DNA from: Laetmonice hystrix | Lineage: Eukaryota | NCBI GenBank assembly: GCA_965235115.1 | Contig: OZ249442.1 | Span: 13,888,001 to 13,952,000 of the forward strand | Length of the DNA: 64,000 nucleotides | Direction: 5' to 3' | Shown here: piece after piece, positions 9,621-56,700 of the stretch | How positions within the stretch are numbered: position 1 is the stretch's first letter | How the letters are laid out: each line of letters begins with the position of its first letter | Notes under the pieces: generated by a model | The model's database searches: none | The model's input: only the letters and a program-made list of their open reading frames with translations | Told to the model about the DNA's origin: nothing | Translations under genes and position numbers: made by a program

Positions 9621-11280
9621 TTAAAGCAGGTATGATTTTAAACTTCCTGATAAGAACTATAATGATAGACATCGAGGGGAATGAGAATGATAACGTTGGA
9701 AGGTTGAAAGATGTCTTTATAGTCGCCAACATTCCTCTTGAGAAGTTTCCAGATCTGTAGACATACACCGGCCCTTCCATACAGTTCCAAACAGTCGAGC
9801 GCATCTTTCTGCTCGTTGAGACTCAGAGGTGCACTGGATGCTAGGATTGGCTGACACGCCAGCGGGCATGGCATGGCGAACTGCATGTCATTGTTCACCC
9901 CTCGCCTCCCGAGAGGTCAAAGGTCGAGAAACCGGAAACGTTTCATTTTTAACTTTCGGGGCTAAAATTACCCGGCCGCTGGTGTATCGCGCCGCCCGCC
10001 CGGCCAACCCGGCCCGGCCCGCCGCCAGCCCGGAGGTAATGGCACGGGAGGCCCGGCAGATCTGATCGTCTCTACACCTGTGCAGGGTGCAAGGCTTCAC
10101 ACTTGCCACTCATGTCCCGTTAGTTTTGCGACCCATCCTGGCCCAGGGCCTTATCCTGCTAACCTATACCCCCCTCAACCCTCCGCCCCTCACCTGCGCA
10201 TACTCACAACATAGTATTCTAACAAACGTAGCCCTTGGCGCTATACTAACCACAACCACGCGTTTCTTTATCCTTGAATCATTCTCTCAGCCCAGGCAGT
10301 ATACGGGCGGCAAGTCTTGACTTATCATTAATTTAAACGGTCGGCCAGAGGTGCTCGCCCAGTTTCCTCTTATAGCCGTCTCTCTGGACGTATATCGGCC
10401 TATATGGGAAACGTATAGGAGGAGATATTTGACCGCACATGTCCCGAATGAGTTTTTTTTTATTAATGAATTATAAATTCATAATATATATATTTTATGT
10501 AGATCCCTTCTATATGTTTACTCTGAGGTATGAGATGATGACTTCAGCAGCCCCCTCCCCCCCCCACACACACACTTTTGAGATTGGGTCTGCATCCCCC
10601 CTGTCCCTGCATCGCGGTTCCTACACCTATGTCACGCCTTTATAGTATAGGCCTATACTACCATACCTGTCGGAGAATTCAGCAAGGATGCTATGGCGAC
10701 TTCGGCGATTATGACGACACATTTCACAGGGGCAGTTCGGGGGGGGGGGGGGGGGCTGGTGGTGCAATACATAGAGACCTTTACTCTATAATAACCTTAA
10801 CTTAACAAATACTTAACTTTATGTATAAATCAGTGATACCATCCATGACCCCCCCCCCCCCTCCTCTCCGTCTTCAAAAAGTTTTTTTTTAACTCTCATT
10901 ACGCATGCGTGACATGTAAATCGGCGGTGGCCGTAAAACTCGCCGCACACTTCGCTCCGCACGCGCCACATCTTGTACCGGGGCGGACCGCCCCTCCTCC
11001 CCTGCTGGTAGTACCCCCTCCCCTTCCCAACCCCCATACCCCTTCATGACATGCCCCCTGCATACCCCCCTCAGGACAGCCATGTATAGACCCAGCGTAT
11101 AGACAGAGCCCCACCGTTGTCCGTCTCTACGACCGTCATATACAGGGTGACTGTCATGTTAACCTCGTGCCTCTCCCCGGGCCCCGATAAGATGGCGACC
11201 CCCGGCCGTGAGGGCGCATGGCCGCCGCGGGCTGCAGGCTATCGCCGGGGGGCGCGCACTGGTGTCGGGCGGGAGCGGGG

Positions 11281-12425
11281 GCGGGGTGTGCGGGAGGTGG
11301 GTCCGGGCGGGCTGGTCGTCGGGGGGTGTCCGGGCGGGCTGGTCGTGGCGGGGTGTGCGGGAGGAGGGTCCGGGCAGGCTGGTCGGGGCGGGGTGTGCGG
11401 GAGGAGGGTCCGGGCGGGCTGGTCCGGGCGGGGTGTGCGGGAGGAGGGTCCGGGCGGGCTGGTCGTGGCGGGGTGTGCGGGAGGTGGGTCCGGGCGGGCT
11501 GGTCGTGGCGGGGTGTGCGGGAGGTGGGTCCGGGCGGGCTGGTCGTGGCGGGGTGTCCGGGAGGAGGGTCCGGGTGGGCTGGTCCGGGCGGGGTGTGCGG
11601 GAGGTGGGTCCGGGCGGGCTGGTCGTGGCGGGGTGTGCGGGGGGAGGGTCCGGGCGGGCTGGTCGTGGCGGGGTGTGCGGGAGGAGGGTCCGGGTGGGCT
11701 GGTCGTGGCGGGGTGTGCGGGAGGTGGGTCCGGGCGGGCTGGTCGTGGCGGGGTGTGCGGGAGGAGGGTCCGGGCGGGCTGGTCGTGGCGGGGTGTGCGG
11801 GAGGAGGGTCCGGGCGGGCTGGTCGTGGCGGGGTGTGCGGGAGGTGGGTCCGGGCGGGCTGGTCGTGGCGGGGTGTGTGGGAGGAGGGTCCGGGTGGGCT
11901 GGTCATGGCGGGGTGTGTGGGAGGAGGGTCCGAGTGGGCTGGTCGTGGCGGGGTGTGTGGGAGGAGGGTCCGGGTGGGCTGGTCGTGGCGGGGTGTGCGG
12001 AAGGAGGGTCCGGGCGGGCTGGTCGTGGCGGGGTGTGCGGGAGGTGGGTCCGGGCGGGCTGGTCATGGCGGGGTGTGTGGGAGGAGGGTCCGGGCGGGCT
12101 GGTCATGGCGGGGTGTGCGGGAGGAGGGTCCGGGCTGGTCGTGGCGGGGTGTGCGGGAGGGGGGTCCGGGCGGGCTGGTCATGGCGGGGTGTGCGGGAGG
12201 AGGGTCCGGGCGCGCTGGTCGTGGCGGGGTGCGCGGGAGGAGGGTCCGGGTGGGCTGGTCGTGGCGGGGTGTGCGGGAAGTGGGCCCGGGCGGGCTGGTC
12301 GTGGCGGGGTGTGCGGGAGGAGGGTCCGGGCGCGCTGGTCGTGGCGGGGTGTGCGGGAGGAGGGTCCGGGTGGGCTGGTCGGGGCGGGATGTGCGGGAGG
12401 AGGGTCCGGGCGGGCTGGTCGGGGC
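11281..12425. repeat. G-rich minisatellite, 40-bp unit, about 28 copies
   Basis: Unit gggcgggctggtcgtggcggggtgtgcgggaggagggtcc. Confidence 0.97.
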
Positions 12426-13859
12426 ACACGCTTCCTGTGACCGTCATTTCCTGGCACCTGTCCGGGAAGATAAGATCACATACTCTGACGACACGGAGAA
12501 CATCCAGGTATATAATGTCACCAGCTCCTGCCAGGGGCAGGTGAATGCAGGCAGATTGTACCTGAATACATTATCGGCCCAACTCCATGGATAGCCAAGG
12601 AGGACCCTCCAGCCTTCCCGAGAAATAGAAAAATATATATAATCATCACTGCCATATAATACACTGGTTGTCATTAAAGCATCTCATTTTGATTCCAGCT
12701 GACTATATTTAGTGGATAAAGCACTGTCAGAGCCAGTCGAGACGTTGTTATGGCGAAATAATGCACGAGCCGAAGGCGAGTGCATTATATCGCCAGAACA
12801 ACGTCGAGACTGGCTCTGGCAGTGCTTTATTTACTTTAGCACACAACCTATAACTATAAACAATTCAAACAGTGCCAAAACTACACCCAGTTGAGCTTTT
12901 ACCGGCGATTTCATTCAGCAACTGTGGCCACCACATCTTGTTTACATTCTGAGGTCGGGGGGACTCCCACAATGACCTTTGAACCGGCCGATTTGTACCA
13001 CGCTTCACTATTGGTCAATCGTTATCACGTGACTTTCATTGACTATAAAAGGAGCTTTCTGATTGGACGGAACATTAAGGCCATGCATTCAGCAATAGCG
13101 CCATCCCCTCTACTAGGCAAATGGACTCGGCGCGTCATTTAAACGATGTAAACAGAGTTCGCTGTGGGCATATCGAATCGAAACGACCCAACTGAACTAT
13201 ACAGACGGGTTTCTTCTCGTAATTCTATAACAACTGCGAAGTCTCAGCCATTAACACTCCATTAGTTGCTAGTTCTACCTATTGACAACCTTGAAGCGAG
13301 GACAGGCAAACACAATGAATTCGAATGAGCACCCTCTCCGATTGGTCAATTCATGACGCGTCATACCCGTGAATTATGGCTCTAATAATTTCACGGTTTT
13401 GGGCCTATAACACACGCTGGGAGCAGCCAGGCGTGTGCTAAAAGCGTATAACTCCCTTCCCAAAAGAAAACTTGTAAGTTATTTCATATTTTTATTTCTA
13501 ATATTTATTTACAGTGCCACGCCATGCACATGTATACATAGTCCAACTACATGCCTCATACATCCCTGTCCCCCACCAATGAAATTGTTTGCTCTTTTTT
13601 TTCTTTTCTTCGTCCTTTTCTTCTTCTGTTCTTCTTTTTTTCTCTCTCTTTTTCCTATTATTTTCTCCTTTTTTTCTCTTCCTTCTTGTTCTCGTGTCAC
13701 CTCCGAGAGCACCTTCGAAGTACCTATATAGGCCTATATCTGATTTTTTAAAATCTACTAAATAACTTTTTAGAATGAAGACTCAACCTTTTGAGTGATA
13801 TAGAGGTCGGTCGGAAAAGTTTAGATTTGAAGTTTACCAGACTCCTCCCCCCCCCCTTA

Positions 13860-13890
<31 letters not shown>

Positions 13891-16684
13891 ACACACACCC
13901 ACACCCCTATGGGCCTCCATTCGCGTACATCTCCCACACCTCGTTGCCTGGTGTCCCGCACACATCACACGTGCCCAGATACATGCATGCCTCGCCGCCC
14001 GTCAGGAGAAGAAACCAGACAACATACACTTGTACTTCCCGTCATCCCAGAACGCGCGCTGCCGACCGCAGTGAACACTTGGTAACAGATGGGACAGACG
14101 AGGCACACATCAAAGTACCGCCGCACGCACTTGCCGGGACTTAATCACCCGTGGTAGCCGGGATTAACCGACGCTTAACCTCGCTTTAACTTTGACCGCG
14201 CGTCCCGCGGCGGGGCGCTGTTGTGCTTCTGCTGAACACGTTATATGAACGAGCCAGAATCATGTGACGATCATCCTGAAGGAAGGTTTGCGTCATCTTG
14301 TGATTAAACTATGGTAGATAACTTAGAGAGAGAGATACATGCGACAGGAAGGAAGTCTGTAGAGTTTGACATCGACCTGTAGGCAGATGACCAGTTAAAA
14401 TGGCGCGCAGACAGACCTATTATGATTAATTTGAATAATTTCTACGATATGATTAATAAATGTCTCATGATCCTTATATGATAATCATGGATATAATAAG
14501 CCTATAGATAGGAAAAATCTTTGACAAACCGACATTTAAGTTTTTCTCAAAATACCAGCATATCTGTTTCCCTTTAAGTATTTATTTTGGGGAGAGATCG
14601 CGTAACATCTTGATGTTCCTTGGGGCGACATACAGATGGCCGTCTAAAGTAAACAGCTCATTTGAAGTTTGGCTCGTGCCTTGAACACGCGCGCCTCCCA
14701 AATACCAAAACTTGCTCGAGGATCAATTCCATGAGAACAAGTAGGATGAAGGATGAAAGGTTCCTTCAGAACTCGTGCCAAACCTTCACCGAATAAGTAT
14801 ACACACTGTTTTTACAAATGGCGCGGGGTGTGGGGCTATATTTCGCCGCCCTCACCCCGTTCCTCACCCCCACCACCCGGCCCCAGGGACGTGGTCTCCC
14901 TGAGTGGGGGGCCGCTGGACCCTCCATGCACCGCCCGGCCTCCATGGACTTGGCGCCGGGCCGAGGCGGCCTTGGCACCCGGGTTTGCCACTTACAGCCC
15001 TCGTAATTAGATCGGCCACAACCGCAACAGGTGCGCGGTACTGGAGGCCGCCCTGGAGCCGCTCGGTGCTACCGGCTGTCTCTCCAGGGCTTGAACGAAA
15101 ACAAGCAACTTCATGGTATAGCGTTATACTCAAGGGGAGGGTGAGGCCTCGTGTATACCTACACGCTTTTTTCTTTAAGATTATTCACCTGCTTCTGCTA
15201 CAGAAACAAAGTATGTGTATAGGAAGAGAACTCCTAAAATCAAAACAAAAGTAACTTGGGGATGACTTAGTCATGATTTACGCTCTAGTTGTAACATTAT
15301 AATATTATCTTTCGATTGAAGAGCTATATATCAAGTTTTCTTTGAATCCTGTGTGGTGATAACCGCATTATAGAGTATACGGTTCTGCGGCTATATAAGG
15401 ATATGCTTCCATCATTGTTCAAAATATGAACAGAGGTCCTTTTGTCAAAGAATAAATTGCATGAATATGTTGTTTATATTCAAGGTTGAATGAGATATAT
15501 TTGTTTTTACGGAGTTCAAGAAAGAAGCAATATATGCATTTATTAAATCATGTTCCGCAATTTCACATTTATCATATTCACCAGATACGGCATATTATGG
15601 ACACGCTTTATTAACCTACTATATGAACATAATTTGCTGTTCTCCCGCATGATTGTTTACATGTATGTGCATGCACAACTCCATGAAATTTAATGAATAT
15701 AGCAGTTTCATTTAAGTTATACATATCCAAACGATAATGTACAGTTAGCTCTACGCTCCGATTAACATTATATTTCAATCATTTTACTTTTCGTCAAACG
15801 TAAACCTCATAATTGGCAGTAAATGACATGTTATGTTTGGAACCCCATCAGGAAATCGCTTCAGATATAGGAAGTCTATGTTTGTTTTCCTTGGACTTAC
15901 TTCACGTTTTCTGTAGGCAGCTGAACAATCTAACGGAATAGTTGAGCGTGAAATTTCTCACATGAAAGCGAGTCCCTAACGCTGCTGAAAAAATGACCAA
16001 AACAAAAGACCAATCGGAATTTCTTTTCTTTGTAATTCCTTTAATCTCCTGCGTTTTCTTTTCCCCCTTTGAGAATAATTACCTGAAGTTGTATGTAAGG
16101 CTCGGCGGGAGATTCTGACGACACACCAGAAACCTGTACCGACGTTTGTATATACACAAGCTTTGATCTCTGTTCGACCTGAACGATGGTGATCCTGGGG
16201 CATGTCTTGGGTTGAAAAGTTCATCAAATTTCTGTTTTATCTGTCCCTGCGGTCGGGTATTCTATAGTTTGTTTCAACATGGTACTTGCACAAGGAAATG
16301 GCGGGTGGGACGCAATCAAAGACGTCAGCCCGCGTACTGTTGGCGGGTGTTCCCTTTGCCGCTCAACCAATCGGAAAACGTATTTACCCGCTAAGAATCG
16401 CAATTCAATTACAGTTGTAAGTTAAATCGCTTTCAACATTTCACGCCTTGAACTCCTTTACTGGGACACCTGTTGGGACACACAGGCTTCAGAGAGAACA
16501 CCTTGCGCTTTTGATTTTGCGGCGAGGTTCTTTCTGTATACTATATGTTCTGGGGTCGGTTTGCGGTTCTTGCAGCTCGCCAAAGATAAATACACTACAA
16601 GTGGTTTGCACTCAGATAGGCGGGCCTCACAGTGGCACTTGTGAGAGATTAGCGGATAAAGGTTGACAATAGGCATGTAAGAAA

Positions 16685-16690
16685 TTTAAT
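16685..16690 (-). terminator. Candidate polyadenylation signal of snail-a (ATTAAA)
   Basis: First poly(A)-type hexamer I found on the minus strand after the stop (about 600 nt); no transcript evidence. Confidence 0.3.
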
Positions 16691-17284
16691 ACCTCTAATA
16701 CGTTATATTCTGGTAGTAAGCTTTGACATGAGTGTTTTTTATGTAGACACTTGTAGATGACGAAAAGGTATACGTTATGGGAGTAGTCAAGTGAAACACT
16801 TTGTGGCAAGGGGATAATACTCATTTAACCTCTGCCACGAACACACTTCAAGTACCATTCTCCAGTCAGACTTAACACCGACAGTGTATAGATCAGATTA
16901 ATTTATCACATTTTCCCATGGGAAACATATTCGGAAGACAAGCGAGCCCTGTTTTTGGCAGGAGGTTCAGAAAATGGACATCATGATCAATCAGCAGCCT
17001 GCTTCCCCATTCAGAAACTGAGCAAGCGTATATTTCACGCATATATATTCTCCATTCATGCCAGCCCCGGTAAATGCCAGAAATATTTTTAAAAACATGT
17101 ACATTAAATAATACTGAATTATGGCTGATATATATAAGAAATGATTTGACGACAAGTTCATAGTCAGACTAAACAGCACACGATTTGGCAAGACATTGCA
17201 TAGCATCAATATAAGGAAATATAATAGCAATATTCCGCAGATAATAAAATATATAAGGAAAAACTACTTAATTATTTTGCGTTC

Positions 17285-18687
17285 TTATGCTATGCTGCCT
17301 GAGCAACCGCCATCCTGATGCTTCAGCAGTAGGGACATTCTTGAAAAAGTTTTCGTGCAAGCTCTGCAATTATATTTCTTAATGTCTGTGTGTGTCTGAA
17401 GGTGAGCGCGCAGGTTGGAGCGGTCAGCAAACGATCGTCCACAGTGAGCGCACTGGAAAGGTTTCTCTCCTGTGTGCGTACGTATGTGACCTTGGAGTAA
17501 CCAAGGTCGCGAGAAGGCCTTGCCGCACAACTGACATTTACACGGCAACGTGTGCGTGCGGATGTGCATCTTGAGCGCGCCCAGGCTCACGTACGTCTTT
17601 TCGCAGTATTTACAACTGAACTGTTTCTTGACTTGCGACACGCAGTGAAATTGCTTGTGCTTGGAGAGCCCGCTGAAGGTGGCGTAACTCTTGTTACACG
17701 CCTCACACTGATACCTGGGAGGGTTCATTGTTCTCCTACTGGGTGCTTCCCTCGCCAGGTCCATGTTTAGGATCCTCATGGCCGTGTCGGCGCTGTTACC
17801 AACATTCCATGGTAAACTCGACCTCTTCTCCGGCCTCGTCTTCTCAAGCGACGCGTCGCTTTGATGTAACGCCGCCTTTTTAATACCAAGATCTAGCGGG
17901 ATTGGGTGATCAGGAAATACCGCGAACTTCGCCGGAGCGAATGGTCGTTCAATAGACGCGATCTTTCGCCTCGCGATCGATGCCGAAGAGTTGGCGCCGC
18001 CGCCATGGAGGGCGTCCGTCGTACGGGGGCGTCTCATGGGGGTGAGGGACTGGAGGAAACGGGGCGTGTGTGGGGACACGGGAGGAGGAACATGAGGAGG
18101 AGGGGGAGGAGGGGAGCGCTGGGGGAGGTGGGAGACAGCTGGGACAAGTCCAGTGAAGGCACCAGCCCTGCCCGGTGCCGGTCTGTACACGTGCGGCCGG
18201 TGCGGGTAGGGGACGGCGCCGTGGTGCCCCACACCGCGGGTATCGGACTGGCCCGGGTAGAGATCCACTCGGCCGTGCATTGCACGTGTGAACGGGTGGT
18301 AGACGGCGGGCATGTGTCTGGTGGCGTGGTGTATGTGGGCCTGCTGGAGCTGGTGGAAGCTGAGCGCCAGGAAGGGATGAGGGGAACACATCGACTGGGG
18401 AGACAAGTCCCTTCTCTTGGCTACCTGTAGTCGTCTCTTCACCTCGGCTTGACCCCTCATGGCGTCCGCCCACAGCCTCGTCCCTTTCTGGGGTTTCATC
18501 AGCCCCGGGGTGTGTGTAGGGGGTAGTGAAGGGGCTGGTCGTGGCACCCTGATACCGACGGAGAGCTCACACGTCCCGGGAGTGGTAGGATTGACCGCCG
18601 GCGTGGCTCCGTTAGAAGGCGGGGTCGGCTCGCCCACACACCCGCCCCCTACACACGACACGCCCTCACTGACCACTGCCGTGGGAC
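17285..18687 (-). CDS. snail: Snail-family C2H2 zinc-finger transcription factor, paralog a, exon 2 (Pro/His-rich region plus 5 zinc fingers)
   Basis: ORF ends [25 protein letters not shown]...[64 protein letters not shown], the Snail (not Scratch) finger array with a terminal CCHC finger. Acceptor aatatatttccag|GT at 18688/18687 is in phase with exon 1. TAA stop at 17287-17285. Confidence 0.96.
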
Positions 18688-21535
18688 CTGGAAATATATT
18701 GCTGGAAATTATGTCATCATCAGCATTCTTCTGGTATGATTATTTATGATATAAAATAATGTCCATGATGCACATTTAATATTCAGGATCACATATAGTC
18801 ATGGCACTGAAGGAATCATGCTCTCATTATATTCGTGTGCCATTATCTCAATGATATTGTTAACATGCAGCTGTTTAAAAATTCACAAAAACAGAGGAAC
18901 CCCTCCAGGATGACCCGAACCCTGTAACTGTCAGTGCACCATCAGATACGATGACCCGAACCCGCAGTCATTGCACCCTATACGATAACCTGAACCCTAA
19001 CTGTCATTGCACCCTATACGATAACCTGAACCCTAACTGTCATTGCACCCTATACGGCAACCTGAACCCTACTGCCATTGCACCCTATACGATAACCTGA
19101 ACTCTAACTGTCATTGCACCCTATACGATAACCTTAACCCTACTGTCATTGCACCCTATACGATAACCTGAACCCTAACTGTCATTGCACCCTATACGGC
19201 AACCTGAACCCTACTGCCATTGCACCCTATACGATAACCTTAACCCTACTGTCATTGCACCCTATACGATAACCTGAACCCTAACTGTCATTGCACCCTA
19301 TACGGCAACCTGAACCCTACTGTCATTGCACCCTATACGATAACCTGAACCCTAACTGTCATTGCACCCTATACGGCAACCTGAACCCTACTGCCATTGC
19401 ACCCTATACGATAACCTGAACTCTAACTGTCATTGCACCCTATACGATAACCTTAACCCTACTGTCATTGCACCCTATACGATAACCTGAACTCTAACTG
19501 TCATTGCACCCTATACGATAACCTGAATACTAACTGTCATTGCACCCTATACGATAACCTGAACCCTAACTGTCATTGCACCCTATACGGCAACCTGAAC
19601 CCTAACTGTCATTGCACCCTATACGATAACCTTAACCCTACTGTCATTGCACCCTATACGGCAACCTGAATCCTAACTGTCATTGCACCCTATACGATAA
19701 CCTGAATCCTAACTGTCATTGCACCCTATACGGTAACCTGAACCCTAACTGTCATTGCACCCTATACGATAACCTGAACCCTACTGTCATTGCACCCTAT
19801 ACGATAACCTGAACCCTAACTGTCATTGCACCCTATACGATAACCTGAACCCTACTGTCATTGCACCCTATACGATAACCTGAATCCTAACTGTCATTGC
19901 ACCCTATACGATAACCTGAATCCTAACTGTCATTGCACCCTATACGATAACCTGAACCCTACTGTCATTGCACCCTATACGATAACCTGAACCCACAGTC
20001 ACCCTCTACGATAATCTGAACCCTACTGTCATTGCACCCTCTACGATAACCTGAACCCTACTGTCATTGCACCCTATACGATAACCTGAATCCTAACTGT
20101 CATTGCACCCTATACGATAACCTGAATCCTAACTGTCATTGCACCCTATACGATAACCTGAACCCACAGTCACCCTATACGATAACCTGAATCCTAACTG
20201 TCATTGCACCCTATACGATAACCTGAACCCTACTGTCATTGCACCCTATACGATAACCTGAACCCTACTGTCATTGCACCCTATACGATAACCTGAACCC
20301 TACTGTCATTGCACCCTATACGTCAACCTGAACCCTACTGTCATTGCACCCTATACGATAACCTGAACCCTAACTGTCATTGCACCCTATACGATAACCT
20401 GAACCCTACTGTCATTGCACCCTATACGATAACCTGAACCCTACTGTCATTGCACCCTATACGATAACCTGAATCCTAACTGTCATTGCACCCTATACGA
20501 TAACCTGAATCCTACTGTCATTGCACCCTATACGATAACCTGAACCCTAACTGTCATTGCACCCTATACGGCAACCTGAACCCTACTGCCATTGCACCCT
20601 ATACGATAACCCGAACCCTACTGTCATTGCACCCTATACGGCAACCTGAACCCTACTGTCATTGCACCCTATACGATAACCTGAACCCACAGTCACCCTC
20701 TACGATAATCTGAACCCTACTGTCATTGCACCCTATACGATAACCTGAACCCTACTGTCATTGCACCCTATACGATAACCTGAACCCTAACTGTCATTGC
20801 ACCCTATACGATAACCTTAACCCTACTGTCATTGCACCCTATACGATAACCTGAACCCTAACTGTCATTGCACCCTATACGATAACCTGAACCCTAACTG
20901 TCATTGCACCCTATACGATAACCTGAACCCTAACTGTCATTGCACCCTATACGATAACCTGAACCCTAACTGTCATTGCACCCTATACGGTAACCTGAAC
21001 CCTACTGTCATTGCACCCTATACGATAACCTGAACCCTACTGTCATTGCACCCTATACGATAACCTGAACCCTAACTGTCATTGCACCCTATACGATAAC
21101 CTGAACCCTAACTGTCATTGCACCCTATACGATAACCTGAACCCACAGTCATTGCACCCTCTACGATAATCTGAACCCTACTGTCATTGCACCCTATACG
21201 ATAACCTGAACCCTACTGTCATTGCACCCTATACGATAACCTGAACCCTACTGTCATTGCACCCTATACGATAACCTGAACCCTACTGTCATTGCACCCT
21301 ATACGATAACCTGAACCCTAACTGTCATTGCACCCTGTACGACAACCTGAACCCCACTGTCATTGCACCCTATACGATAACCTGAACCCACAGTCACCCT
21401 CTACGATAATCTGAACCCTACTGTCATTGCACCCTATACGATAACCTGAACCCTAACTGTCATTGCCGCCTCCAGGGAATACGATAACTCAAACCCGAAC
21501 TGTTAGTGAACCCTCCAGGTATAACACGAACCCAC
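18688..21535 (-). other. Phase-1 GT-AG intron of snail-a (2848 bp)
   Basis: Canonical donor and acceptor restore one continuous SNAG-to-zinc-finger frame. Confidence 0.88.
18955..21462. repeat. Intronic minisatellite, 35/36-bp unit, about 70 copies
   Basis: Unit cattgcaccctatacgataacctgaaccct(a)actgt. Confidence 0.97.
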
Positions 21536-21674
21536 CTGTGTCCTTTGTACCGGCCACGTCTTCCTCCTGTGTAACCGACTGGTCACCCGACCTGGAGTCA
21601 CCTACTGGAGGTGGAATCCTCCTGGTTGTGCTTCCACCCCGTCCCTTGTTTTTGATCAAGAACGCCCGCGGCAT
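21536..21674 (-). CDS. snail: Snail paralog a, exon 1 (SNAG domain)
   Basis: Starts MPRAFLIKNK (SNAG). Donor ACAG|gtgggt after 46 codons + 1 nt (phase 1) joins exon 2 in frame as G|GT, giving 513 aa. Confidence 0.93.
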
Positions 21675-43615: not shown

Positions 43616-45015
43616 TCATAGACATGATCCACAACCTCCATCTTCGTGTTTCAGTAAGAGAGACATTCGAGAGAAAGACTTTGAACAGTTTCGACAATTA
43701 TATTTTTTAATGTCTGTGTGTGTCTGAAGGTGAGCGCGCAGGTTGGAGCGGTCAGCAAACGATCGTCCACAGTGAGCACACTGGAAAGGTTTCTCGCCTG
43801 TGTGCGTACGTATGTGACCTTGGAGTAACCAAGGTCGTGAGAAGGCCTTGCCGCACAATTGACATTTGCACGGCAACGTGTGCGTGCGGATGTGCATCTT
43901 GAGCGCGCCCAGGCTCACGTACGTCTTATCACAATACTTGCAGGTAAACTCCTTTTTGATGGTGGACGTGCAGTGAAACTGCTTGTGCTTGGAAAGTCCG
44001 CTGAAAGTCGCGTAGCTTTTACCACAAGCCTCGCATTGATATCTCGGAGGGTCGCTGTCGCGTCTTTTCTTTGGCATCACGTCCTTGAGGTCGTTCATGT
44101 CCAGCGGGACGTTTTCGATCCCCCAGGGGATCTTTGGTTTCACACGCTCCTCTGGGGCCGCATTGTCTTTCCACGGCTTCAGGTTTTGTTCTTTGATGGT
44201 CGTTATGTTGAGAGGCGCAGGCTGGATTCCCTGCATCTGCGAGTAGATGGAGTACTGGATGTCGGCTGCGCCGCGGGCGTAGTCGGCCTGTAGGGGGCGT
44301 TTTTCACTGAGAGCGACACCTGGCGTGCAGTTTTGCGCGGGATGTCTCTCGCTAAGCGACACTGGGAACCTTGACGGAGGCCCGGCGGGATAGCTCGATG
44401 ACGTCACGGATGACGTTGATGACGAGTCGGTAGACGCCAGGGGGAGTGACGTCAGGTGAGGAGGGAGCCTGGAGGGATGCTGAGGGAGGAGATCAAAGGA
44501 TGGGACGTGTCGGTGAGAGGAGGAGGGGGAGGAGGAGGACACCGCCGGTCGATCCCTTGACTTGGACTCGTAGTCGAGGACAGGTGGCGGTCTTGGCACC
44601 CTGTCGGATCCAGCGAGGCCGAGCCGGTGGTGGTAGGACGGTGGACTGGGCGGGAGGCGAGGGTAACACCGTGGGTATGGCTCGTCCCGGTGAGGGGCCC
44701 AGATCCTCGGAGTCTGGTAACTACACCGTCCCGGGCTGAGCCGGTCCCTGCAGGTATCAGCAACCACTGCCCGGCAAACCTCATCCAAGTGGCCGGTCGT
44801 GTAGAGGTGGTGGGCGGTGGGGAAGAGCCGGTGAGTGGGGCCAGCGGCCGCCGGGGAGCGGGCCACTAGGAGCCGGTCGGGCTCGCTCCCAGGGTCCGGT
44901 GATATCTGCCCCAAGGGATGCGCCTTTGTGAGCGGCCCGACGGGCACCGATCCTTGGGGCGGGGTCCTTTCGGCCAGGTAGGCGACGTACCGTTCCTTTG
45001 TCTCAAGTGGCACAC
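43616..45015 (-). CDS. snail: Snail-family C2H2 zinc-finger transcription factor, paralog b, exon 2
   Basis: ORF ends [25 protein letters not shown]...[15 protein letters not shown]. Acceptor cttttgttgtttccccag|GT at 45016/45015. TGA stop at 43618-43616. Confidence 0.96.
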
Positions 45016-47382
45016 CTGGGGAAACAACAAAAGAAAGACAATACAGGAGCGGTTAATCAAAGGACACTTGATGAAGGAGGCCACAACCACTGCAGTCTGT
45101 GTGACAACAACCTGTTGGGAAGTTTGGACATCAAAGGCCAATTATCTCCTTGCTTTTACGAGTATATACGTGGGAATATCTCAAGGTGCGTTTCTTAAGG
45201 CGAAAAATGATTAAAGTACACTGAAACGTTGCCGATGGATATGTGACCCCAAGTTCAATGTCAATATTCTTCTACTTTAATTGGGCTGTAAATAGTCCGA
45301 ATCTCAACCAAGCGACAGGTCACAGTGATAAAATATGGCGGGCCTCTCATTTAGACCTTCAATGAAAGTCAAACGGGTTAAATTAAATTTGTCAGGGAAG
45401 ACTGCGACACAAGATGTGTTGAATGTCGGTTTGGGGAAATATACCCGCGGTCAAAGCCTGGCATGTTTATCAAATAGCCACTTGATTGTGGTGATTTGAG
45501 GGCATGACGGGCAGGTATGAATAGCAACACGCTCGATGGTGAGCTAGGTTATTCATGGTCAGTTTATCAGGTATTATTGAGGGCGGGCGGTGTGGGTGCC
45601 CGCACCCGCCTGGCTGCCTGGCGTTGACAGGGTACTGTGGCCACCGCATGGTGACTGTCCACTGCCCAGTGAGGGATGAGTGTTATACCTGGCACACAGC
45701 AAGGCCAGGTGGGGGTCCCACTGCTGGACCCCTACCACCACCCGCCCCCACCCCGCCACAGCCTCTAACACCTGAATGCAAATTAAGGGCGCGACCGGAC
45801 CAAGGAAGTGGGGGTGGTAGAGAGATTGGGGGTGGGGTATAGGGGTTGAGGGGTTGAACCCCTTACAGACAGGCTCATCTATACACCCCCATTGATCATG
45901 TAGACCGACTCCAGCGCCCTCTCACGACCATACACAAGTCATCATCCACCACTGACTCCCTCTCTGCCCACAACCTCAGCCATGTCCTGTCGACTATTCT
46001 CCCAGCCAGCACAAAGGATTCATGGCGTCAAGTTCTGCATGACTATGTGGCTCTACAAGAACCGTGGCCATGAAGGGTCAGCTTCCCTCTCCTCCTATGT
46101 TAAACCTCCTCACTGGTTGACAAGGTGAGAGGTTACAAACACACACGTATTTCGTTTGGTAGTTTTCTGTGGCGAGTAATGACTTGTAGCTGTGATTAAT
46201 TGACTATGGTATCAGCCCTGATTGCTGCCAGCCTCAGGTGTCCGGACCCCTGCAGTGACAGAGTGGGGTAGGGTCGACCAGGGAACCCCCTCGCCAGCCA
46301 TCCGTGGAGACACGAGGAGGGTATTATGATAGGACAGTGACACTCCCTCACAATAAACTCCTCCGTTATATTCTCATGTTACTATAGGCCTGAATCAAAG
46401 CGAATGGGGATCTTATACAAGAGATATTTATACAGTATACGGGCCTACTGCATGCATGGCAGTGCCAGTGTTGTGGTATGGCATTAGGTCCATGTACTCA
46501 ATTAGGTCTTTTCAAGATAAAGAACACCGTGTCTGACCATCATATACCACTTGAAATTGACTGTTTATGTTTGCACAACCTATGCTGGTTTATCACGTTG
46601 AATTCTGACGTCAACCATAACAATCTGTAGGCCGAGAGCAGAGCCCAACTCTAGAGCACCTATAATGTTGATAAGTTACCTGACGAACGAGATAAATAGG
46701 GCCTAATCCTCGCTTGAACATTTTGTAGTTTATGATGGTGCCGTGACCGTGTTGAGGGCACGTATCCATCCAGGCCTGTATGCCCTCCGCCTATATACGT
46801 ATCATACGTCATACGTCGGTCACGCACCGTGAGAGGGCGCGACGCGAGTCGGGCGCACGCGGGTCACGTGAGTTGTCCAGAGGGCTGACCCCACTGAGAT
46901 CGAAGATGGCTGCCGCAGAGCGACACGGGCGGACGGTGGTCAGTGGCCCGGGGCACTCACACCATCAGGTTAGAACTCTGGGACGCTGCAGGGGTCACGC
47001 CAGCACGCGACCAACACTAGCTGTTATGTCTCATTCACAGATTTACATACGCCTACATAATCATTCTTTCATTCTTTCACCATGTCTGAAAGTTCACACT
47101 CCAGCCCATGTCAAGCAGGCCTACATGATGTAGACTATTCTGTATCTTTTCCTTGTCATGGACCTGTAGACTAGCTCAATTTACTATACCAACTGCCTTT
47201 CACTAGTACGAAATATAAGGCACACTGTCATGACCTTTATAATTATTTATATATAATATCATAATGAATATTAGATTATTATCAAGCTAATAAACATGCA
47301 GTGTCAAATATTGCACATTTTTCATAGACTATTTCGTCCGGTAGTCTTGGTGGAACGCAGGACCGTGCATGCGTCGGCGTCG

Positions 47383-47888
47383 ACCTTTGGGTCCCTGCCT
47401 TTCTATCCCTGTATTTCTGATACCTTTGGGTCCCTGCCTTTCTATCCCTGTATTTCTGATACCTTTGGGTCCCTGCCTTTCTATCCCTGTATCTCTGATA
47501 CCTTTGGGTCCCTGCCTTTCTATCCCTGTATTTCTGATACCTTTGGGTCCTTGCCTTTCTATCCCTGTATTTCTGATACCTTTGGGTCCTTGCCTTTCTA
47601 TCCCTGTATTTCTGATACCTTTGGGTCCTTGCCTTTCTATCCCTGTATTTCTGATACATTCGGGTCCTTGCCTTTCTATCCCTGTATTTCTGATACCTTC
47701 GGGTCCTTGCCTTTCTATCCCTGTATTTCTGATACCTTTGGGTCCTTGCCTTTCTATCCCTGTATTTCTGATACCTTTGGGTCCTTGCCTTTCTATCCCT
47801 GTATTTCTGATACCTTTGGGTCCTTGCCTTTCTATCCCTGTATTTCTGATACCTTTGGGTCCTTGCCTTTCTATCCCTGATTTCTGAT
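47383..47888. repeat. Intronic minisatellite, 39-bp unit, about 13 copies
   Basis: Unit acctttgggtc(c/t)tgcctttctatccctgtatttctgat. Confidence 0.97.
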
Positions 47889-48129
47889 ATTTATAATTGT
47901 ACGCCTGTTCATTGGAAGTAATTAAAGTTAAATGTTAAATTATTATATTAATGGTAAAGACCTAACTCGGCAGCTGCTTGAGACCATTACCTGTACGGGT
48001 CAGACGGGTGTGTGTGTACCTGAAGACATGTACACGTGAGCGCGATGTCAGACCTCAAAAGTTGAAAAGAAATGCGACTATTTTATCAATCTATATGTGC
48101 GTGTGCGCGTTATCCCAGTTTTCCAACCT

Positions 48130-48270
48130 GTATACGACTGGTGATGGCGGTGTCTGTCTCCGAAGGTCGAAACCACCTTCTTTCATATGAGAAGGTAATG
48201 AGAAGTATAGACCTGCTTTCCTCAGGTCAGTGGGGTTTTCCGGGGACACCGGTTTCCCCCCAACATTTGT
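48130..48270 (+). mobile_element. Degenerate SINE with V/Meta-like conserved core
   Basis: caggtcagtggggttttccggggacaccggtttcccccc resembles the GGTTTTCTCCGGGTACTCCGGTTTCCTCC core (recalled) of V/Meta-type SINEs; B-box-like ggtcgaaacc upstream. Confidence 0.4.
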
Positions 48271-48370
48271 CCAACTCGTCCATACAATTATTTTTATTTA
48301 TAATATCAAATTTTAACCTTTTGATCTGATTTTCACGTGTGGGCGTGTATAAAGGATTGTGTGAACCTAC

Positions 48371-48596
48371 CTGCTGATCGAGGCCGTCCGATGTCTGTGG
48401 TGGGACAGCAGCCTGCAGGGAGAGTCGGGTCGATGGCCGGTGATGGTGGGGACAATGAACGGGACTTACACGGCCCCACCTCCCCACACACCCCGGCGGC
48501 CACCCCCACACCGGGACCAGCGGCGGCGGCGGCCGGTGGCGGCGGCAGCATCCCACGCTTGGCACCACGTTTCTTCACTAAAAACGCACGAGGCAT
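48371..48596 (-). CDS. snail: Snail paralog b, exon 1 (SNAG domain)
   Basis: Starts MPRAFLVKKR. Donor GCAG|gtaggt after 75 codons + 1 nt (phase 1) joins exon 2 in frame, giving 541 aa. Confidence 0.93.
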
Positions 48597-53700: not shown

Positions 53701-56700
53701 TGCAACATCCGAGTCTCTACATCAAACAAAAGATGTTCCTTAAAAACTATGTATGTGGTTGGCATGAGTCAGTCACCTTAAGAAGATATACTCCCATGTA
53801 CCTCATTAGAAAGACAAGTGTATTGTTCTATGACTCTCTGACGCATAAATTTCCCATTTCATTGCTTCCGGAGGGTGCATATTTCAACTTTTGTATGAAG
53901 GTGTCGACGAAAGCCAGCCACCGGGCCTGACTCGACAAAGGCACCGCCTGCCTACAGCACAGCGCCCTCTAGCGCCGGTCGAACAGACTTGGTGCCATAG
54001 TCGGGTGGCACCTGTTCACGAAAAGATCTTTTTACTATGCAAAATATGTGCATACCCTTCCAGAAAATCAGAAAATACCTTCAATTAACAATTGTCGCCC
54101 GCGCACAGACAACAGGTTTTATTCTCGTGTAGATCGTTAGACAATACTCGAGTCGTGCATAGATATATGGTATATAGCATTTCTCCCACGGCCTCGGTGA
54201 CATTTTTGACGAGCCTATACCTGCTGTCACCTAGATCTCCCGCCTACGTTGTGAAAATCACTTGCAATCATGCAATTCACACAAGATGCATGTACGTTAG
54301 CATGTATGATGCTAAGTCTGGTATATATCAGACCATTATATGTCCTTATACAATGCTGCCCACGTGTGTTATTGGCTATTACGCTGTTAGGTTGTAGAGA
54401 ACAAATGATGCTAATTTATGGAACGCATTTAAAGGAAATGGCAACTTAGGTATAGAGTCATTTCAGTCGTACATACAGCACCAGAAGAGAAGGACAATTA
54501 GTCCAAGAAGTGTCATGGTATTTCCTCATGTACTGATTGGAACGTTCGTGTATACCTTTAATTATATCAGTCTGTTTTAATAAGTGATATGTCTGTCGTT
54601 TTCATGTGGACAAAATGGATTGTCTCATTGGTAAAAACAAAGGATAGAGAGAGACAGGGTGTTGCCATTGTATTGTCAACAAGTTGAGTACATGTCCATA
54701 GCTCACCTTCCTACTGGGACGCCAATAACATTGTCGTGTGGGTACATCACGCCTCGTGTGACCAGGCGTCCCAGAGAAGTAACCAGTCAGGTATTGTCTA
54801 CACGGGACAATGTCCTCGTGGTGTAGCTTTGCTTTGTTCTCTGTCAGTCCTTCGTTTAAAGATATTATGGATGACAGTTCAATTAAAGGGCCCGTACCGA
54901 TAGACCACGTAGGGGATGGCCGTCTGTGTGAAAGGCGACGTTGGCACAGACCTGCAGGTTGCTATACAAGTTACCTAACGCCATGCCTGACTACCTATCC
55001 TTCTCTTTGATGGCCACGGCTCCTTAAAATTTGGCCGCTGCCCGAATGTGGCGCTGCGGACGTTCGGCCTAACTCGGGAATGTTCGGTGAAGCGGCGTGA
55101 ACGCTTGAAACATCCAATTAGCGGTATCGATTGAAACTACGTCGGGACCTGACTGAGATGTGGGTCTATAATGTTTGCTCGTCTATATCAAACCGTCCAC
55201 AATTTTAAGATGTTTATCACCGTCTCTTCAAAGATTATGATTGAGTCCAGCGGCGAAACGTTCACCGAGAAATCGACAGCCGCAGGCTCCTGTATGGCCT
55301 TGATTTGACGAGTGTTTTTTTCCGGGGGCAAGTAACCCCTGGACTTTTTGTAAAGTACTTTACACGCCCTACGCTCATTTATCTACTCCTCAGTACCAGA
55401 AGTCGACCTTGCACTTCATTGGTCTCAAGCCAAGTAGCGAAATAAGTAAATTTTATCATGAAAGAGAGTTGCATACACACTGCTGGCACGGCGCCCGCTA
55501 GGTAAAGGTGATAAAGACAAGCCGACATTGTATCATTTCTCTACTGTATATCTGGGATAATATCTACACCAGCTGAACATATAGGCCTACGCCTGGGTGC
55601 CAGACAAGTTGGTCTCCTGCTTTTATCTTCCTGAGGCAAGGTGAGCGAACTTGAGAACGGCGTTTGGATGATAGAAGTGATTTTGAAACATTCCCAAAAC
55701 AAACAGAAGCGTTTCCAACCACATGGAATATGTGAAGAAAAGTCAACGTACAAAAAACAATTATATTTGTCCTTTCCTAGATGTTAGATATTATACATGT
55801 AGCGGGTATAATGAACCGCTCATAAGAGTTGTGTGACAAAAAAAACGGTGTGAAGTTCAAAGAAATTGTTCCTTTTTGGCCCGATCTTGGAACCTATCAT
55901 GTAGACATTAACCCAAACAAACACTTTAATATACAACATTTGGTGTAGAGTGACCGATTTCCAAATATTGGTCTCGCATGGCTTAATGCACACACCACTA
56001 TACTCTTTGGTCTAGACTTATACTCCGCAACATATGCCCTTACATGTTTTCATGTCGTTAACTTCACGTTCAACAAGTCCTCAAGAAATTATAGGCCCCC
56101 TCCCCAATGCTATAAAGATATAGTCCTATCTCATTCTGTTGCATAAAAGATGAAGCATTATTTCTATAAGCCCACATGCTCTCTGTTTGCGCGAATTTTA
56201 TCAGAACACTCAATATACATTTGCATGACTGCCTCTCAGCAATATTCTACCATATCGTACAAAAACAGGACGCCCCCTGGCGGGCGGCTGACGCGGGGCA
56301 CGAACATCCGAGCGGGGATTATTTGCCGCTACACGTGTTTCGACTCGGACAATGCCGCAGAGATGCCGACAGACACAAGCAGGCGTTCGTTTTCATTGGC
56401 CACCGAGTCATCTTGCTGGGCAAGCACAGACGGGACCACTTAGTCGGAAAATTGCACGCTTGCGTCCCGTTGCCTACACCTGTGTTAGTCCGAGGTTAAA
56501 AAGCCAGGCCCTCTTTGAAGCCGTAAGGAAGCCGCGCCGCGATTATTCTACATGAGAGCGTTTAGACGAAATCGCACGACAAACCACTCACGTTTAAATT
56601 CCCTGTTTCGTTATCTAAACCCTGTAGGTCTATCTATTCATGTCTTAATTTCACGGGGGGATCAATTTGCGCTGAGCGGAAAAGAGGGCGGTGTGTGGGT

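What the first reader, a model, noticed from the sequence alone, without database searches (positions are those of the whole stretch)
17186..17204. Near-fully complementary miR-31 site in the snail-a 3' UTR (candidate slicing or target-directed miRNA decay site)
About 80-100 nt after the stop, the mRNA reads 5'-GCUAUGCAAUGUCUUGCCA-3'. Against the conserved invertebrate miR-31 (recalled: AGGCAAGAUGUUGGCAUAGCU) it gives an 8mer seed, G:U wobbles at positions 9-10, Watson-Crick pairs at 11-13 and 15-20, and one bulged G: 16 WC + 2 GU pairs. Such extended pairing is rare for animal targets and is the geometry associated with slicing or TDMD. A second miR-31 7mer-A1 site lies at 16804-16810. I found no miR-31 seed site in the snail-b UTR. 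From memory, miR-31 is reported to repress Snail in sea urchin embryos. The TDMD/slicing role is inference.
Basis: partly seen in the sequence, partly recalled or inferred. Interest (0 to 1): 0.72.

Follow-up and report, generated by a model that had tools for sequence, protein, structure and literature searches.

The report
Strong miR-31 site in snail-a tail
The untranslated tail of one of this worm's four Snail genes carries an unusually long match to the animal's own miR-31 microRNA; it is most likely an ordinary but strong repression site, and any role in cutting the message or destroying the microRNA is untested.

Summary
At 17186-17204 (- strand), 81-99 nt after the conserved stop codon of a Snail-family gene, the mRNA would read GCUAUGCAAUGUCUUGCCA. 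Pairing is an 8mer seed, G:U at positions 9-10, and 9 more Watson-Crick pairs around one bulged G (-27.9 kcal/mol; a perfect match gives -41.0).

- **In the mRNA?** No poly(A) hexamer lies between the stop and the site, so it is probably in every mRNA isoform. No RNA data could be found.
- **Chance:** only 0.25% of 8mers placed in random UTR context pair this well. Genome-wide, though, seed-plus-3'-anchor matches occur at chance frequency (11 against 10 for the control pattern).
- **Paralogs:** only snail-a of the four tandem paralogs has miR-31 seed matches.
- **Conservation:** Snail transcripts that group with scallop (Pecten) keep a miR-31 8mer in a conserved UTR block.
- **Precedent:** a review reports that miR-31 suppresses Snail in sea urchin.

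Best reading: a strong canonical miR-31 repression site. Slicing is unlikely because of the G:U pairs at 9-10 and the bulge. The geometry fits most published features of target-directed miRNA degradation (TDMD) sites, but that role is unsupported. The scan listed this stretch once before, with no follow-up.

The parts
17186..17204 (-). Extended miR-31-5p target site. Seed match at 17186-17193 (8mer UCUUGCCA), G:U pairs to miRNA nt 9-10, Watson-Crick pairs to nt 11-13 and 15-20 (or 14-20 with G13 bulged).
   Evidence: Duplex energy is -27.9 kcal/mol, the best miR-31 duplex on either strand of the 64-kb window.
16804..16810 (-). Second miR-31 site, a 7mer-A1 (CUUGCCA), about 475 nt after the stop.
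17285..17287 (-). Stop codon (TAA) of snail-a. The C-terminus ...[11 protein letters not shown] is conserved in the ortholog P0001 (...[11 protein letters not shown]).
17288..18687 (-). snail-a exon 2 coding sequence, including five C2H2 zinc fingers at 17303-17707. The acceptor AG is at 18689-18688 (inferred).
21536..21674 (-). snail-a exon 1 coding sequence with the SNAG motif MPRAFLIK. The donor CAG|GTGGGT is inferred; an alternative donor lies at 21551.
15539..17284 (-). Inferred 3' UTR. There is no AATAAA or ATTAAA between the stop and the site. The first ATTAAA is at 16690-16685, and AATAAA hexamers are at 15612-15607 and 15544-15539.
   Evidence: No RNA evidence: the three runs found are genomic DNA.

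Best explanation
This is a high-affinity canonical miR-31 target site in the 3' UTR of snail-a, one of four tandem Snail-family paralogs of a spiralian (probably annelid) genome. miR-31-loaded Argonaute would bind through the 8mer seed match. The long 3' pairing (nt 11-13 and 15-20, or 14-20) would add affinity and specificity, leading to deadenylation, decay and translational repression of snail-a wherever miR-31 is expressed. The weaker 7mer-A1 site about 390 nt further downstream would add to this. Shown here: the sequence, the cognate miRNA gene, the pairing and its energy, the position after a conserved stop codon and before any poly(A) hexamer, and the restriction to one paralog. Inferred: that the site is in the mature mRNA, that miR-31 and snail-a meet in the same cells, and that repression results.
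For: - The site and 8mer are present, and the 19-mer occurs once in the genome.
- There is one bona fide miR-31 hairpin, whose 5p arm pairs as described.
- The duplex energy is -27.9 kcal/mol against -41.0 for a perfect match. It is the best miR-31 duplex in the window, and only 0.25% of 8mers in random UTR context reach it.
- The site lies 81 nt after a stop codon shared with the ortholog P0001, and upstream of every AATAAA/ATTAAA.
- The local context is 67% A+U and shows no stable structure.
- It is neither a miRNA hairpin nor part of a repeat.
- miR-31 is reported to suppress Snail in sea urchin (PMC7854572).
- Snail mRNAs that group with Pecten, one of them polyadenylated, keep a miR-31 8mer in a conserved UTR block.
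- The miR-31 8mer occurs in 3 of 11 other snail 3' flanks within 3 kb, which only 1.2% of all 8mers match.
Against: - There is no RNA evidence that the UTR includes the site, or that miR-31 and snail-a are co-expressed. Runs X1-X3 are genomic DNA.
- Conservation in the only 1:1 ortholog could not be examined.
- The three other paralogs and the more distant homologs lack a site near the stop.
- Within 1.5 kb of the stop, the cross-species enrichment is not significant: 1 of 11 flanks.
- Seed-plus-3'-anchor matches occur at chance frequency genome-wide, and four of them pair as well or better.
- Predicted accessibility of the site is only average.
Confidence: 0.65

Rival explanations
1. The site is a TDMD trigger. 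In cells that transcribe snail-a strongly, seed pairing plus 3' pairing would pull the miR-31 3' end out of the Argonaute PAZ pocket and recruit a ZSWIM8-type ubiquitin ligase. That would destroy miR-31, so snail-a lowers its own repressor and de-represses other miR-31 targets.
For: It meets most of the site features listed in PMC10899785 section 11. It has an 8mer with an A/U-rich 3' flank. It has 7 contiguous 3' pairs (nt 14-20), where at least 6 are seen in 12 of 13 validated triggers. Its 3' pairing energy is -11.9 kcal/mol, inside the validated range of -9.6 to -17.1. Opening the two central G:U pairs costs only 4.8 kcal/mol, so a looped conformation is plausible. The site is in a non-coding part of the mRNA.
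Against: Positions 9-13 can pair (G:U, G:U, A:U, A:U, C:G), whereas validated triggers have 3-11 unpaired nucleotides there. The last two miRNA nucleotides are unpaired. Sites with the same anchors are at chance frequency in the genome, so the geometry alone predicts little. There are no conservation, miRNA-level or tailing/trimming data. ZSWIM8 was not looked for in this genome.
Confidence: 0.13
2. The site is a slicing site. miR-31-guided Argonaute would cut snail-a mRNA between the target bases opposite miRNA nt 10 and 11, as miR-196 does with HOXB8.
For: A continuous helix of 12 pairs from nt 2 to 13 is possible if both G:U wobbles form, with six further pairs beyond a one-base bulge.
Against: The two pairs on the seed side of the scissile bond (nt 9 and 10) are G:U wobbles, and a miRNA base is bulged at 13/14. 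The review notes that disrupting pairing at 9-10 prevents cleavage (PMC10899785). From general knowledge, central wobbles also slow slicing markedly. The slicer competence of this animal's miRNA Argonaute was not tested.
Confidence: 0.04
3. The match is a chance occurrence with no selected function.
For: Eleven comparable anchor matches exist genome-wide against 10 for the reversed control, and four of them pair as well or better. About 50 8mers this well paired would be expected in 1.25 Gb of two-strand sequence (0.0025 x about 19,000 8mers). A reader scanning many UTRs against many miRNAs will meet some. No conservation was shown.
Against: The chance of such a site falling in this particular UTR is about 7e-5. 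The pair miR-31/Snail was already reported as a target pair in another phylum. It recurs as a conserved 8mer in the scallop-related (Pecten-clade) snail UTRs. A second seed site lies in the same UTR.
Confidence: 0.18

Closest known systems
miR-31 repression of Snail in the sea urchin skeletogenic network (Stepicheva and Song 2015, as summarised in PMC7854572)
   Same: Same miRNA family (identical over the 21 nt I recall for the sea-urchin miRNA), same target gene family, and a site in the 3' UTR.
   Different: A different phylum, and one paralog out of four. The pairing here extends far beyond the seed. The sea-urchin link is reported from experiments (I recall reporter assays, but the original paper was not held here); this one is only predicted. 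The sea-urchin site sequences could not be read for the same reason.
Validated TDMD trigger sites (Cyrano/miR-7, NREP/miR-29b, HSUR1/miR-27, Drosophila ago1/miR-999), reviewed in PMC10899785
   Same: An 8mer seed, at least 6 contiguous 3' pairs, a 3' pairing energy within the validated range, and a location in a non-coding region.
   Different: The central region is pairable rather than looped. The 3' pairing stops two nucleotides short of the miRNA end. There is no conservation, no evidence of ZSWIM8 dependence and no miRNA-level evidence.
miR-196-directed slicing of HOXB8 mRNA (from general knowledge)
   Same: A near-complete match of a conserved miRNA to the 3' UTR of a developmental transcription factor.
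   Different: As I recall it, the HOXB8 site is fully paired apart from a single G:U outside the centre. Here two G:U pairs sit at positions 9-10 and there is a bulge at 13/14.
Seed sites with 3'-supplementary pairing (Bartel-type canonical sites)
   Same: Seed pairing plus added pairing that starts around nt 12-13 and raises affinity.
   Different: Supplementary pairing is usually 3-5 bp (PMC10899785). Here it is 9 bp with one bulge.

Membership tests
Canonical animal miRNA 8mer target site | Perfect match to miRNA nt 2-8 followed by an A opposite nt 1 | tested here: met
   UCUUGCCA at 17186-17193 (-) against seed GGCAAGA.
Canonical animal miRNA 8mer target site | The cognate miRNA is encoded by the same genome | tested here: met
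   A single RF00661 hit of 59.5 bits (cut-off 51) at G000:C2:9951361-9951443.
Canonical animal miRNA 8mer target site | The site lies within the 3' UTR of the mature mRNA | tested here: inconclusive
   It lies 81 nt after a conserved stop codon and upstream of all AATAAA/ATTAAA hexamers. No RNA runs were found.
Canonical animal miRNA 8mer target site | Preferential conservation of the site in orthologous UTRs | not testable with these tools
More distant homologs are not orthologs of snail-a.
Canonical animal miRNA 8mer target site | Seed-dependent repression when the miRNA is present | not testable with these tools
   Needs reporters or a perturbation of miR-31.
TDMD trigger site | Seed pairing, typically an 8mer with flanking A/U | tested here: met
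   8mer with AAAU on its 3' side and AAUG on its 5' side. Criterion from PMC10899785.
TDMD trigger site | At least 6 contiguous base pairs to the miRNA 3' region | tested here: met
   Seven contiguous Watson-Crick pairs at nt 14-20, or 6+3 around a one-base bulge.
TDMD trigger site | 3' pairing energy within about -9.6 to -17.1 kcal/mol | tested here: met
   -11.9 kcal/mol by ViennaRNA duplexfold for nt 11-22. The review used RNAstructure, so the numbers are only roughly comparable.
TDMD trigger site | An unpaired central loop (3-11 nt) that disrupts pairing at positions 9-10 | tested here: inconclusive
   Positions 9-10 are G:U wobbles and 11-13 can pair. Opening 9-10 costs 4.8 kcal/mol (-27.9 to -23.1). 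There is no forced loop.
TDMD trigger site | ZSWIM8-dependent fall in miRNA level caused by the site | not testable with these tools
   Needs small-RNA quantification after mutating the site or losing ZSWIM8. The ZSWIM8 ortholog was not searched for.
miRNA-directed slicing site | Uninterrupted Watson-Crick pairing around the scissile bond (nt 9-12) and beyond | tested here: not met
   U9:G and G10:U wobbles, and a bulged G at 13/14.
miRNA precursor (antisense miR-31-like gene) | A stable hairpin, or a match to the Rfam mir-31 model, at the locus | tested here: not met
   Fold z-scores are 0.1-0.8 on both strands, and mir-31 does not hit 15000-19000 even at E<=10.

The most novel reading that the evidence does not exclude
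snail-a mRNA doubles as a TDMD trigger. Where snail-a is switched on (for example in ingressing or mesodermal cells), its 3' UTR site would destroy miR-31. That would turn a one-way repression into a mutual-antagonism switch and release the other miR-31 targets. It would also be a first TDMD trigger proposed in a spiralian, lying in the mRNA of a core regulator of epithelial-mesenchymal transition.
Probability: 0.12. Interest if true: 0.75.

Novelty: new member of a known kind. Interest (0 to 1): 0.4.

Why it matters
If real, it extends the miR-31/Snail link beyond sea urchin to a spiralian worm. Together with the conserved 8mer in the scallop-related (Pecten-clade) snail UTRs, that would suggest either an old bilaterian regulatory link or one that arises repeatedly. 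It also shows how paralogs can diverge after duplication, since only one of four tandem Snail genes carries the site. The extended pairing makes it a concrete and cheap candidate for testing TDMD outside flies, worms and vertebrates. As it stands it is a well-founded prediction, not a demonstrated mechanism.

Tried and rejected
- **RNA evidence.** They proved to be genomic DNA: even depth of about 30-60x, continuous into intergenic DNA, and no splice joints. They say nothing about the UTR. The SNPs seen at 17068, 17089, 17091 and 17258 miss the site, but only about 0.15 would be expected within it.
- **Antisense miR-31-like gene.** The + strand reads UGGCAAGACAUUGCAUAGC, which resembles miR-31. 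I rejected this reading: neither strand forms a hairpin and there is no Rfam hit.
- **Repeat origin.** A dispersed repeat of more than 2.8 kb contains TGGCTAGCCATTGCATAGC, a 17/19 match. Its flanks do not match the UTR, so I rejected it.
- **A genome-wide class of extended miR-31 sites.** The count equals the control, and the other sites lie in nondescript DNA or inside a RING-finger ORF. Rejected.
- **Ortholog UTR.** P0001 is the true ortholog, but its sample's file is too large to serve DNA.
- **More distant homologs.** L021, L022, L024, L025, L027, L028 and L029 have no comparable site near the stop. The 8mers found 2.6-3.0 kb downstream in L025 and L021 lie beyond several poly(A) hexamers, so they may be outside the UTRs.
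- **Second strong duplex.** The duplex at about 54,930-54,960 (-26.9 kcal/mol) has no seed match and was dismissed.
- **Original sea-urchin paper.** It is not held in the library.
- **miR-31 in ZSWIM8 papers.** The hits I opened or could judge refer to the miR-310 family, not miR-31.

Full report
**What is at the coordinates.** The window carries two Snail-family genes on the - strand. Snail-a has its SNAG start (MPRAFLIK) at 21674 and five C2H2 fingers at 17303-17707. Snail-b has its start at 48596 and fingers at 43631-44035. The snail-a reading frame ends with TAA at 17287-17285. The C-terminal ...[11 protein letters not shown] is matched by ...[11 protein letters not shown] in the closest database protein, P0001 (60% identity over 463 aa), so the stop is genuine. 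My inferred gene model is exon 1 at 21674-21536 (phase 1), an acceptor AG at 18689-18688, and exon 2 from 18687. The 19-mer GCTATGCAATGTCTTGCCA lies at 17186-17204 (-), which is UTR positions +81 to +99. It occurs once in the window, and the genome holds no second exact copy.

**The miRNA.** A pattern search of the window's own assembly (627 Mb, 35 contigs) found one exact GGCAAGATGTTGGCATAGC, on contig 2. Rfam's mir-31 model matches that hairpin end to end at 59.5 bits against a cut-off of 51. A whole-genome scan with the model finds no other copy.

**The pairing.** I laid the pairs out explicitly.
- Positions 2-8 are Watson-Crick, with an A opposite position 1, which makes an 8mer.
- U9:G and G10:U are wobbles.
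- Positions 11-13 and 15-20 are Watson-Crick, with G14 bulged. The equivalent alternative is G13 bulged and 14-20 paired.
- Positions 21-22 are unpaired.
- That is 16 Watson-Crick pairs plus 2 G:U pairs, as claimed.

The duplex energy is -27.9 kcal/mol, against -41.0 for a perfect complement. It is the best miR-31 duplex on either strand of the window. A second duplex of -26.9 near 54,940 has no seed match. Opening the two wobbles leaves -23.1. The 3' part alone forms 7 contiguous pairs worth -11.9.

**Is it more than chance?**
- I placed the 8mer into 20,000 random UTR-like contexts from this window. It reached -27.9 or better in 49 cases, or 0.25%.
- About 0.027 8mers are expected in a 1.8-kb UTR, so the joint chance for this miRNA and this UTR is roughly 7e-5.
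- There is an important caveat. Genome-wide, the anchored pattern GCTATGC-N3-7-TCTTGCC has 11 hits besides the miR-31 gene itself, against 10 for the reversed control.
- Four of those hits pair as well or better (-29.1 to -31.2). They sit in nondescript DNA or inside a RING-finger ORF.
- So extended complementarity is not in itself enriched, and a scan of many UTRs against many miRNAs will turn up chance cases.
- What lifts this one is its place: the start of the 3' UTR of a gene family already reported as a miR-31 target in another phylum.

**Is it in the mRNA?** I could not show this directly. The only runs that hold the sequence are three runs from one sample. They have even 30-60x depth that continues into intergenic DNA, with no splice joints, so they are genomic reads. 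Indirectly, there is no AATAAA or ATTAAA between the stop and the site. The first ATTAAA is at +596 and the first AATAAA at +1674. Any normal 3' end would therefore include both the extended site and the 7mer-A1 at 16804-16810. The surroundings are 67% A+U. They show no structure beyond what shuffled sequence gives, and predicted accessibility is average.

**Rival origins, checked.** The + strand of the site looks like a miR-31 variant. Neither strand folds into a hairpin (z-scores 0.1-0.8), and mir-31 does not hit the region even at E<=10. A young dispersed repeat shares 17 of the 19 bases but not the flanks.

**Paralogs and relatives.**
- The assembly has four Snail paralogs within 112 kb of contig 7, plus three more distant relatives nearby.
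- Only snail-a has any miR-31 seed match in the 1.5 kb after its stop.
- In a maximum-likelihood tree, snail-a, snail-b and the paralog just outside the window each pair 1:1 with a protein of one other species (P0001, P0008, P0010, all on one ENA contig). The triplication therefore predates that split.
The decisive comparison, whether the 3'-pairing half is kept in the ortholog's UTR, could not be made.
- More distant homologs with DNA available have no comparable site near the stop. These are not orthologs of snail-a.
- Two of them have 8mers 2.6-3.0 kb downstream, beyond several poly(A) hexamers.
- One positive result came from two snail transcripts that group with Pecten in the tree. One of them ends in poly(A).
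- Both carry a miR-31 8mer about 750-780 nt after the stop, inside a block of about 500 nt that is far better conserved than the first 480 nt of the same UTRs.
- Across 11 non-discovery snail 3' flanks, the miR-31 8mer occurs in 3 within 3 kb. Only 1.2% of all 8mers do as well. Within 1.5 kb it occurs in just 1, which is not significant. I call this suggestive only.

**Taxon.** My own data show only spiralian affinities. The nearest named hits are nemertean, brachiopod, mollusc and Capitella proteins. Earlier notes of this scan call the genome a probable annelid.

**Literature.** A review states that sea-urchin miR-31 suppresses Pmar1, Alx1, Snail and VegfR7, citing Stepicheva and Song 2015 (PMC7854572). 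The original paper is not held.

The TDMD review PMC10899785 lists what validated triggers share:
- seed pairing, usually an 8mer with A/U flanks;
- at least 6 contiguous 3' pairs, in 12 of 13 triggers;
- a 3' pairing energy of -9.6 to -17.1 kcal/mol;
- a central loop of 3-11 unpaired nucleotides that disrupts pairing at 9-10 and so prevents slicing.

The review also notes that centrally paired targets sometimes trigger TDMD. I found no report that links miR-31 to ZSWIM8 or describes miR-31 targets in annelids.

**Mechanism.** The most likely reading (about 0.65) is a strong canonical repression site, with the 8mer providing recognition and the long 3' pairing adding affinity. Slicing (about 0.04) is disfavoured by wobbles at both positions on the seed side of the scissile bond and by the bulge. 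TDMD (about 0.13) fits three of the four structural criteria. It is ambiguous on the fourth, because the centre can pair but opens cheaply. It has no supporting data, and the chance-level genome-wide count warns that geometry alone predicts little. A chance match without function remains at about 0.18.

**Verdict.** This is a new member of a known kind, a predicted miR-31/Snail target pair in a further phylum with unusually extended pairing. It is of moderate interest and can be settled by one ortholog comparison and standard RNA experiments.

Noticed in passing
G000:C7:13.88-13.99 Mb (window 17285-21674 and 43631-48596, plus L016 and L017): Four Snail paralogs lie in tandem on one strand within about 112 kb. 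Three more distant Snail/Scratch-like zinc-finger genes sit at 13.71, 14.41 and 14.49 Mb. Three of the four tandem paralogs (snail-a, snail-b, L017) each have a 1:1 ortholog on a single contig of a related species, and the fourth (L016) pairs with P0067 from a different ENA sample, so the cluster predates those splits.
   Followed up: partly
window 12708-13442: A 733-bp stretch has word depth of about 11,000-21,000 against about 30-60 for its flanks. One contig in each of the three runs skips it exactly. It looks like a high-copy repeat inserted in one allele only (an insertion polymorphism).
   Followed up: no
L037-L041 (for example G000:C2:18173205-18176223): A dispersed repeat family of more than 2.8 kb has copies 97-99.7% identical to each other, and at least nine copies contain TGGCTAGCCATTGCATAGC or a one-base variant of it. 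It is probably a recently active mobile element and is unrelated to the snail-a UTR.
   Followed up: partly
L030:3800-4300 and L033:1950-2450: The snail mRNAs of two species that group with Pecten share a block of about 500 nt in the 3' UTR that is far better conserved than the diverged first 480 nt. The block contains a miR-31 8mer.
   Followed up: partly
L025:13814-13838: Two miR-31 8mers lie 17 nt apart, 2.6 kb downstream of the middle gene of a three-gene snail cluster in another spiralian genome (GCA_013332975.1). Whether they lie in a UTR is unknown.
   Followed up: partly
window 15281-15353 (+): A weak match to a C/D-box snoRNA model (RF00535, 26.6 bits against a cut-off of 49, E=0.2), opposite the distal snail-a UTR. 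It is probably chance.
   Followed up: no
L011 (G000:C10:24804692-24804710): A miR-31 8mer with 3' pairing (-29.5 kcal/mol) lies inside a 668-aa RING-finger (TRIM-like) open reading frame, so it is a coding-sequence site of unknown relevance.
   Followed up: no
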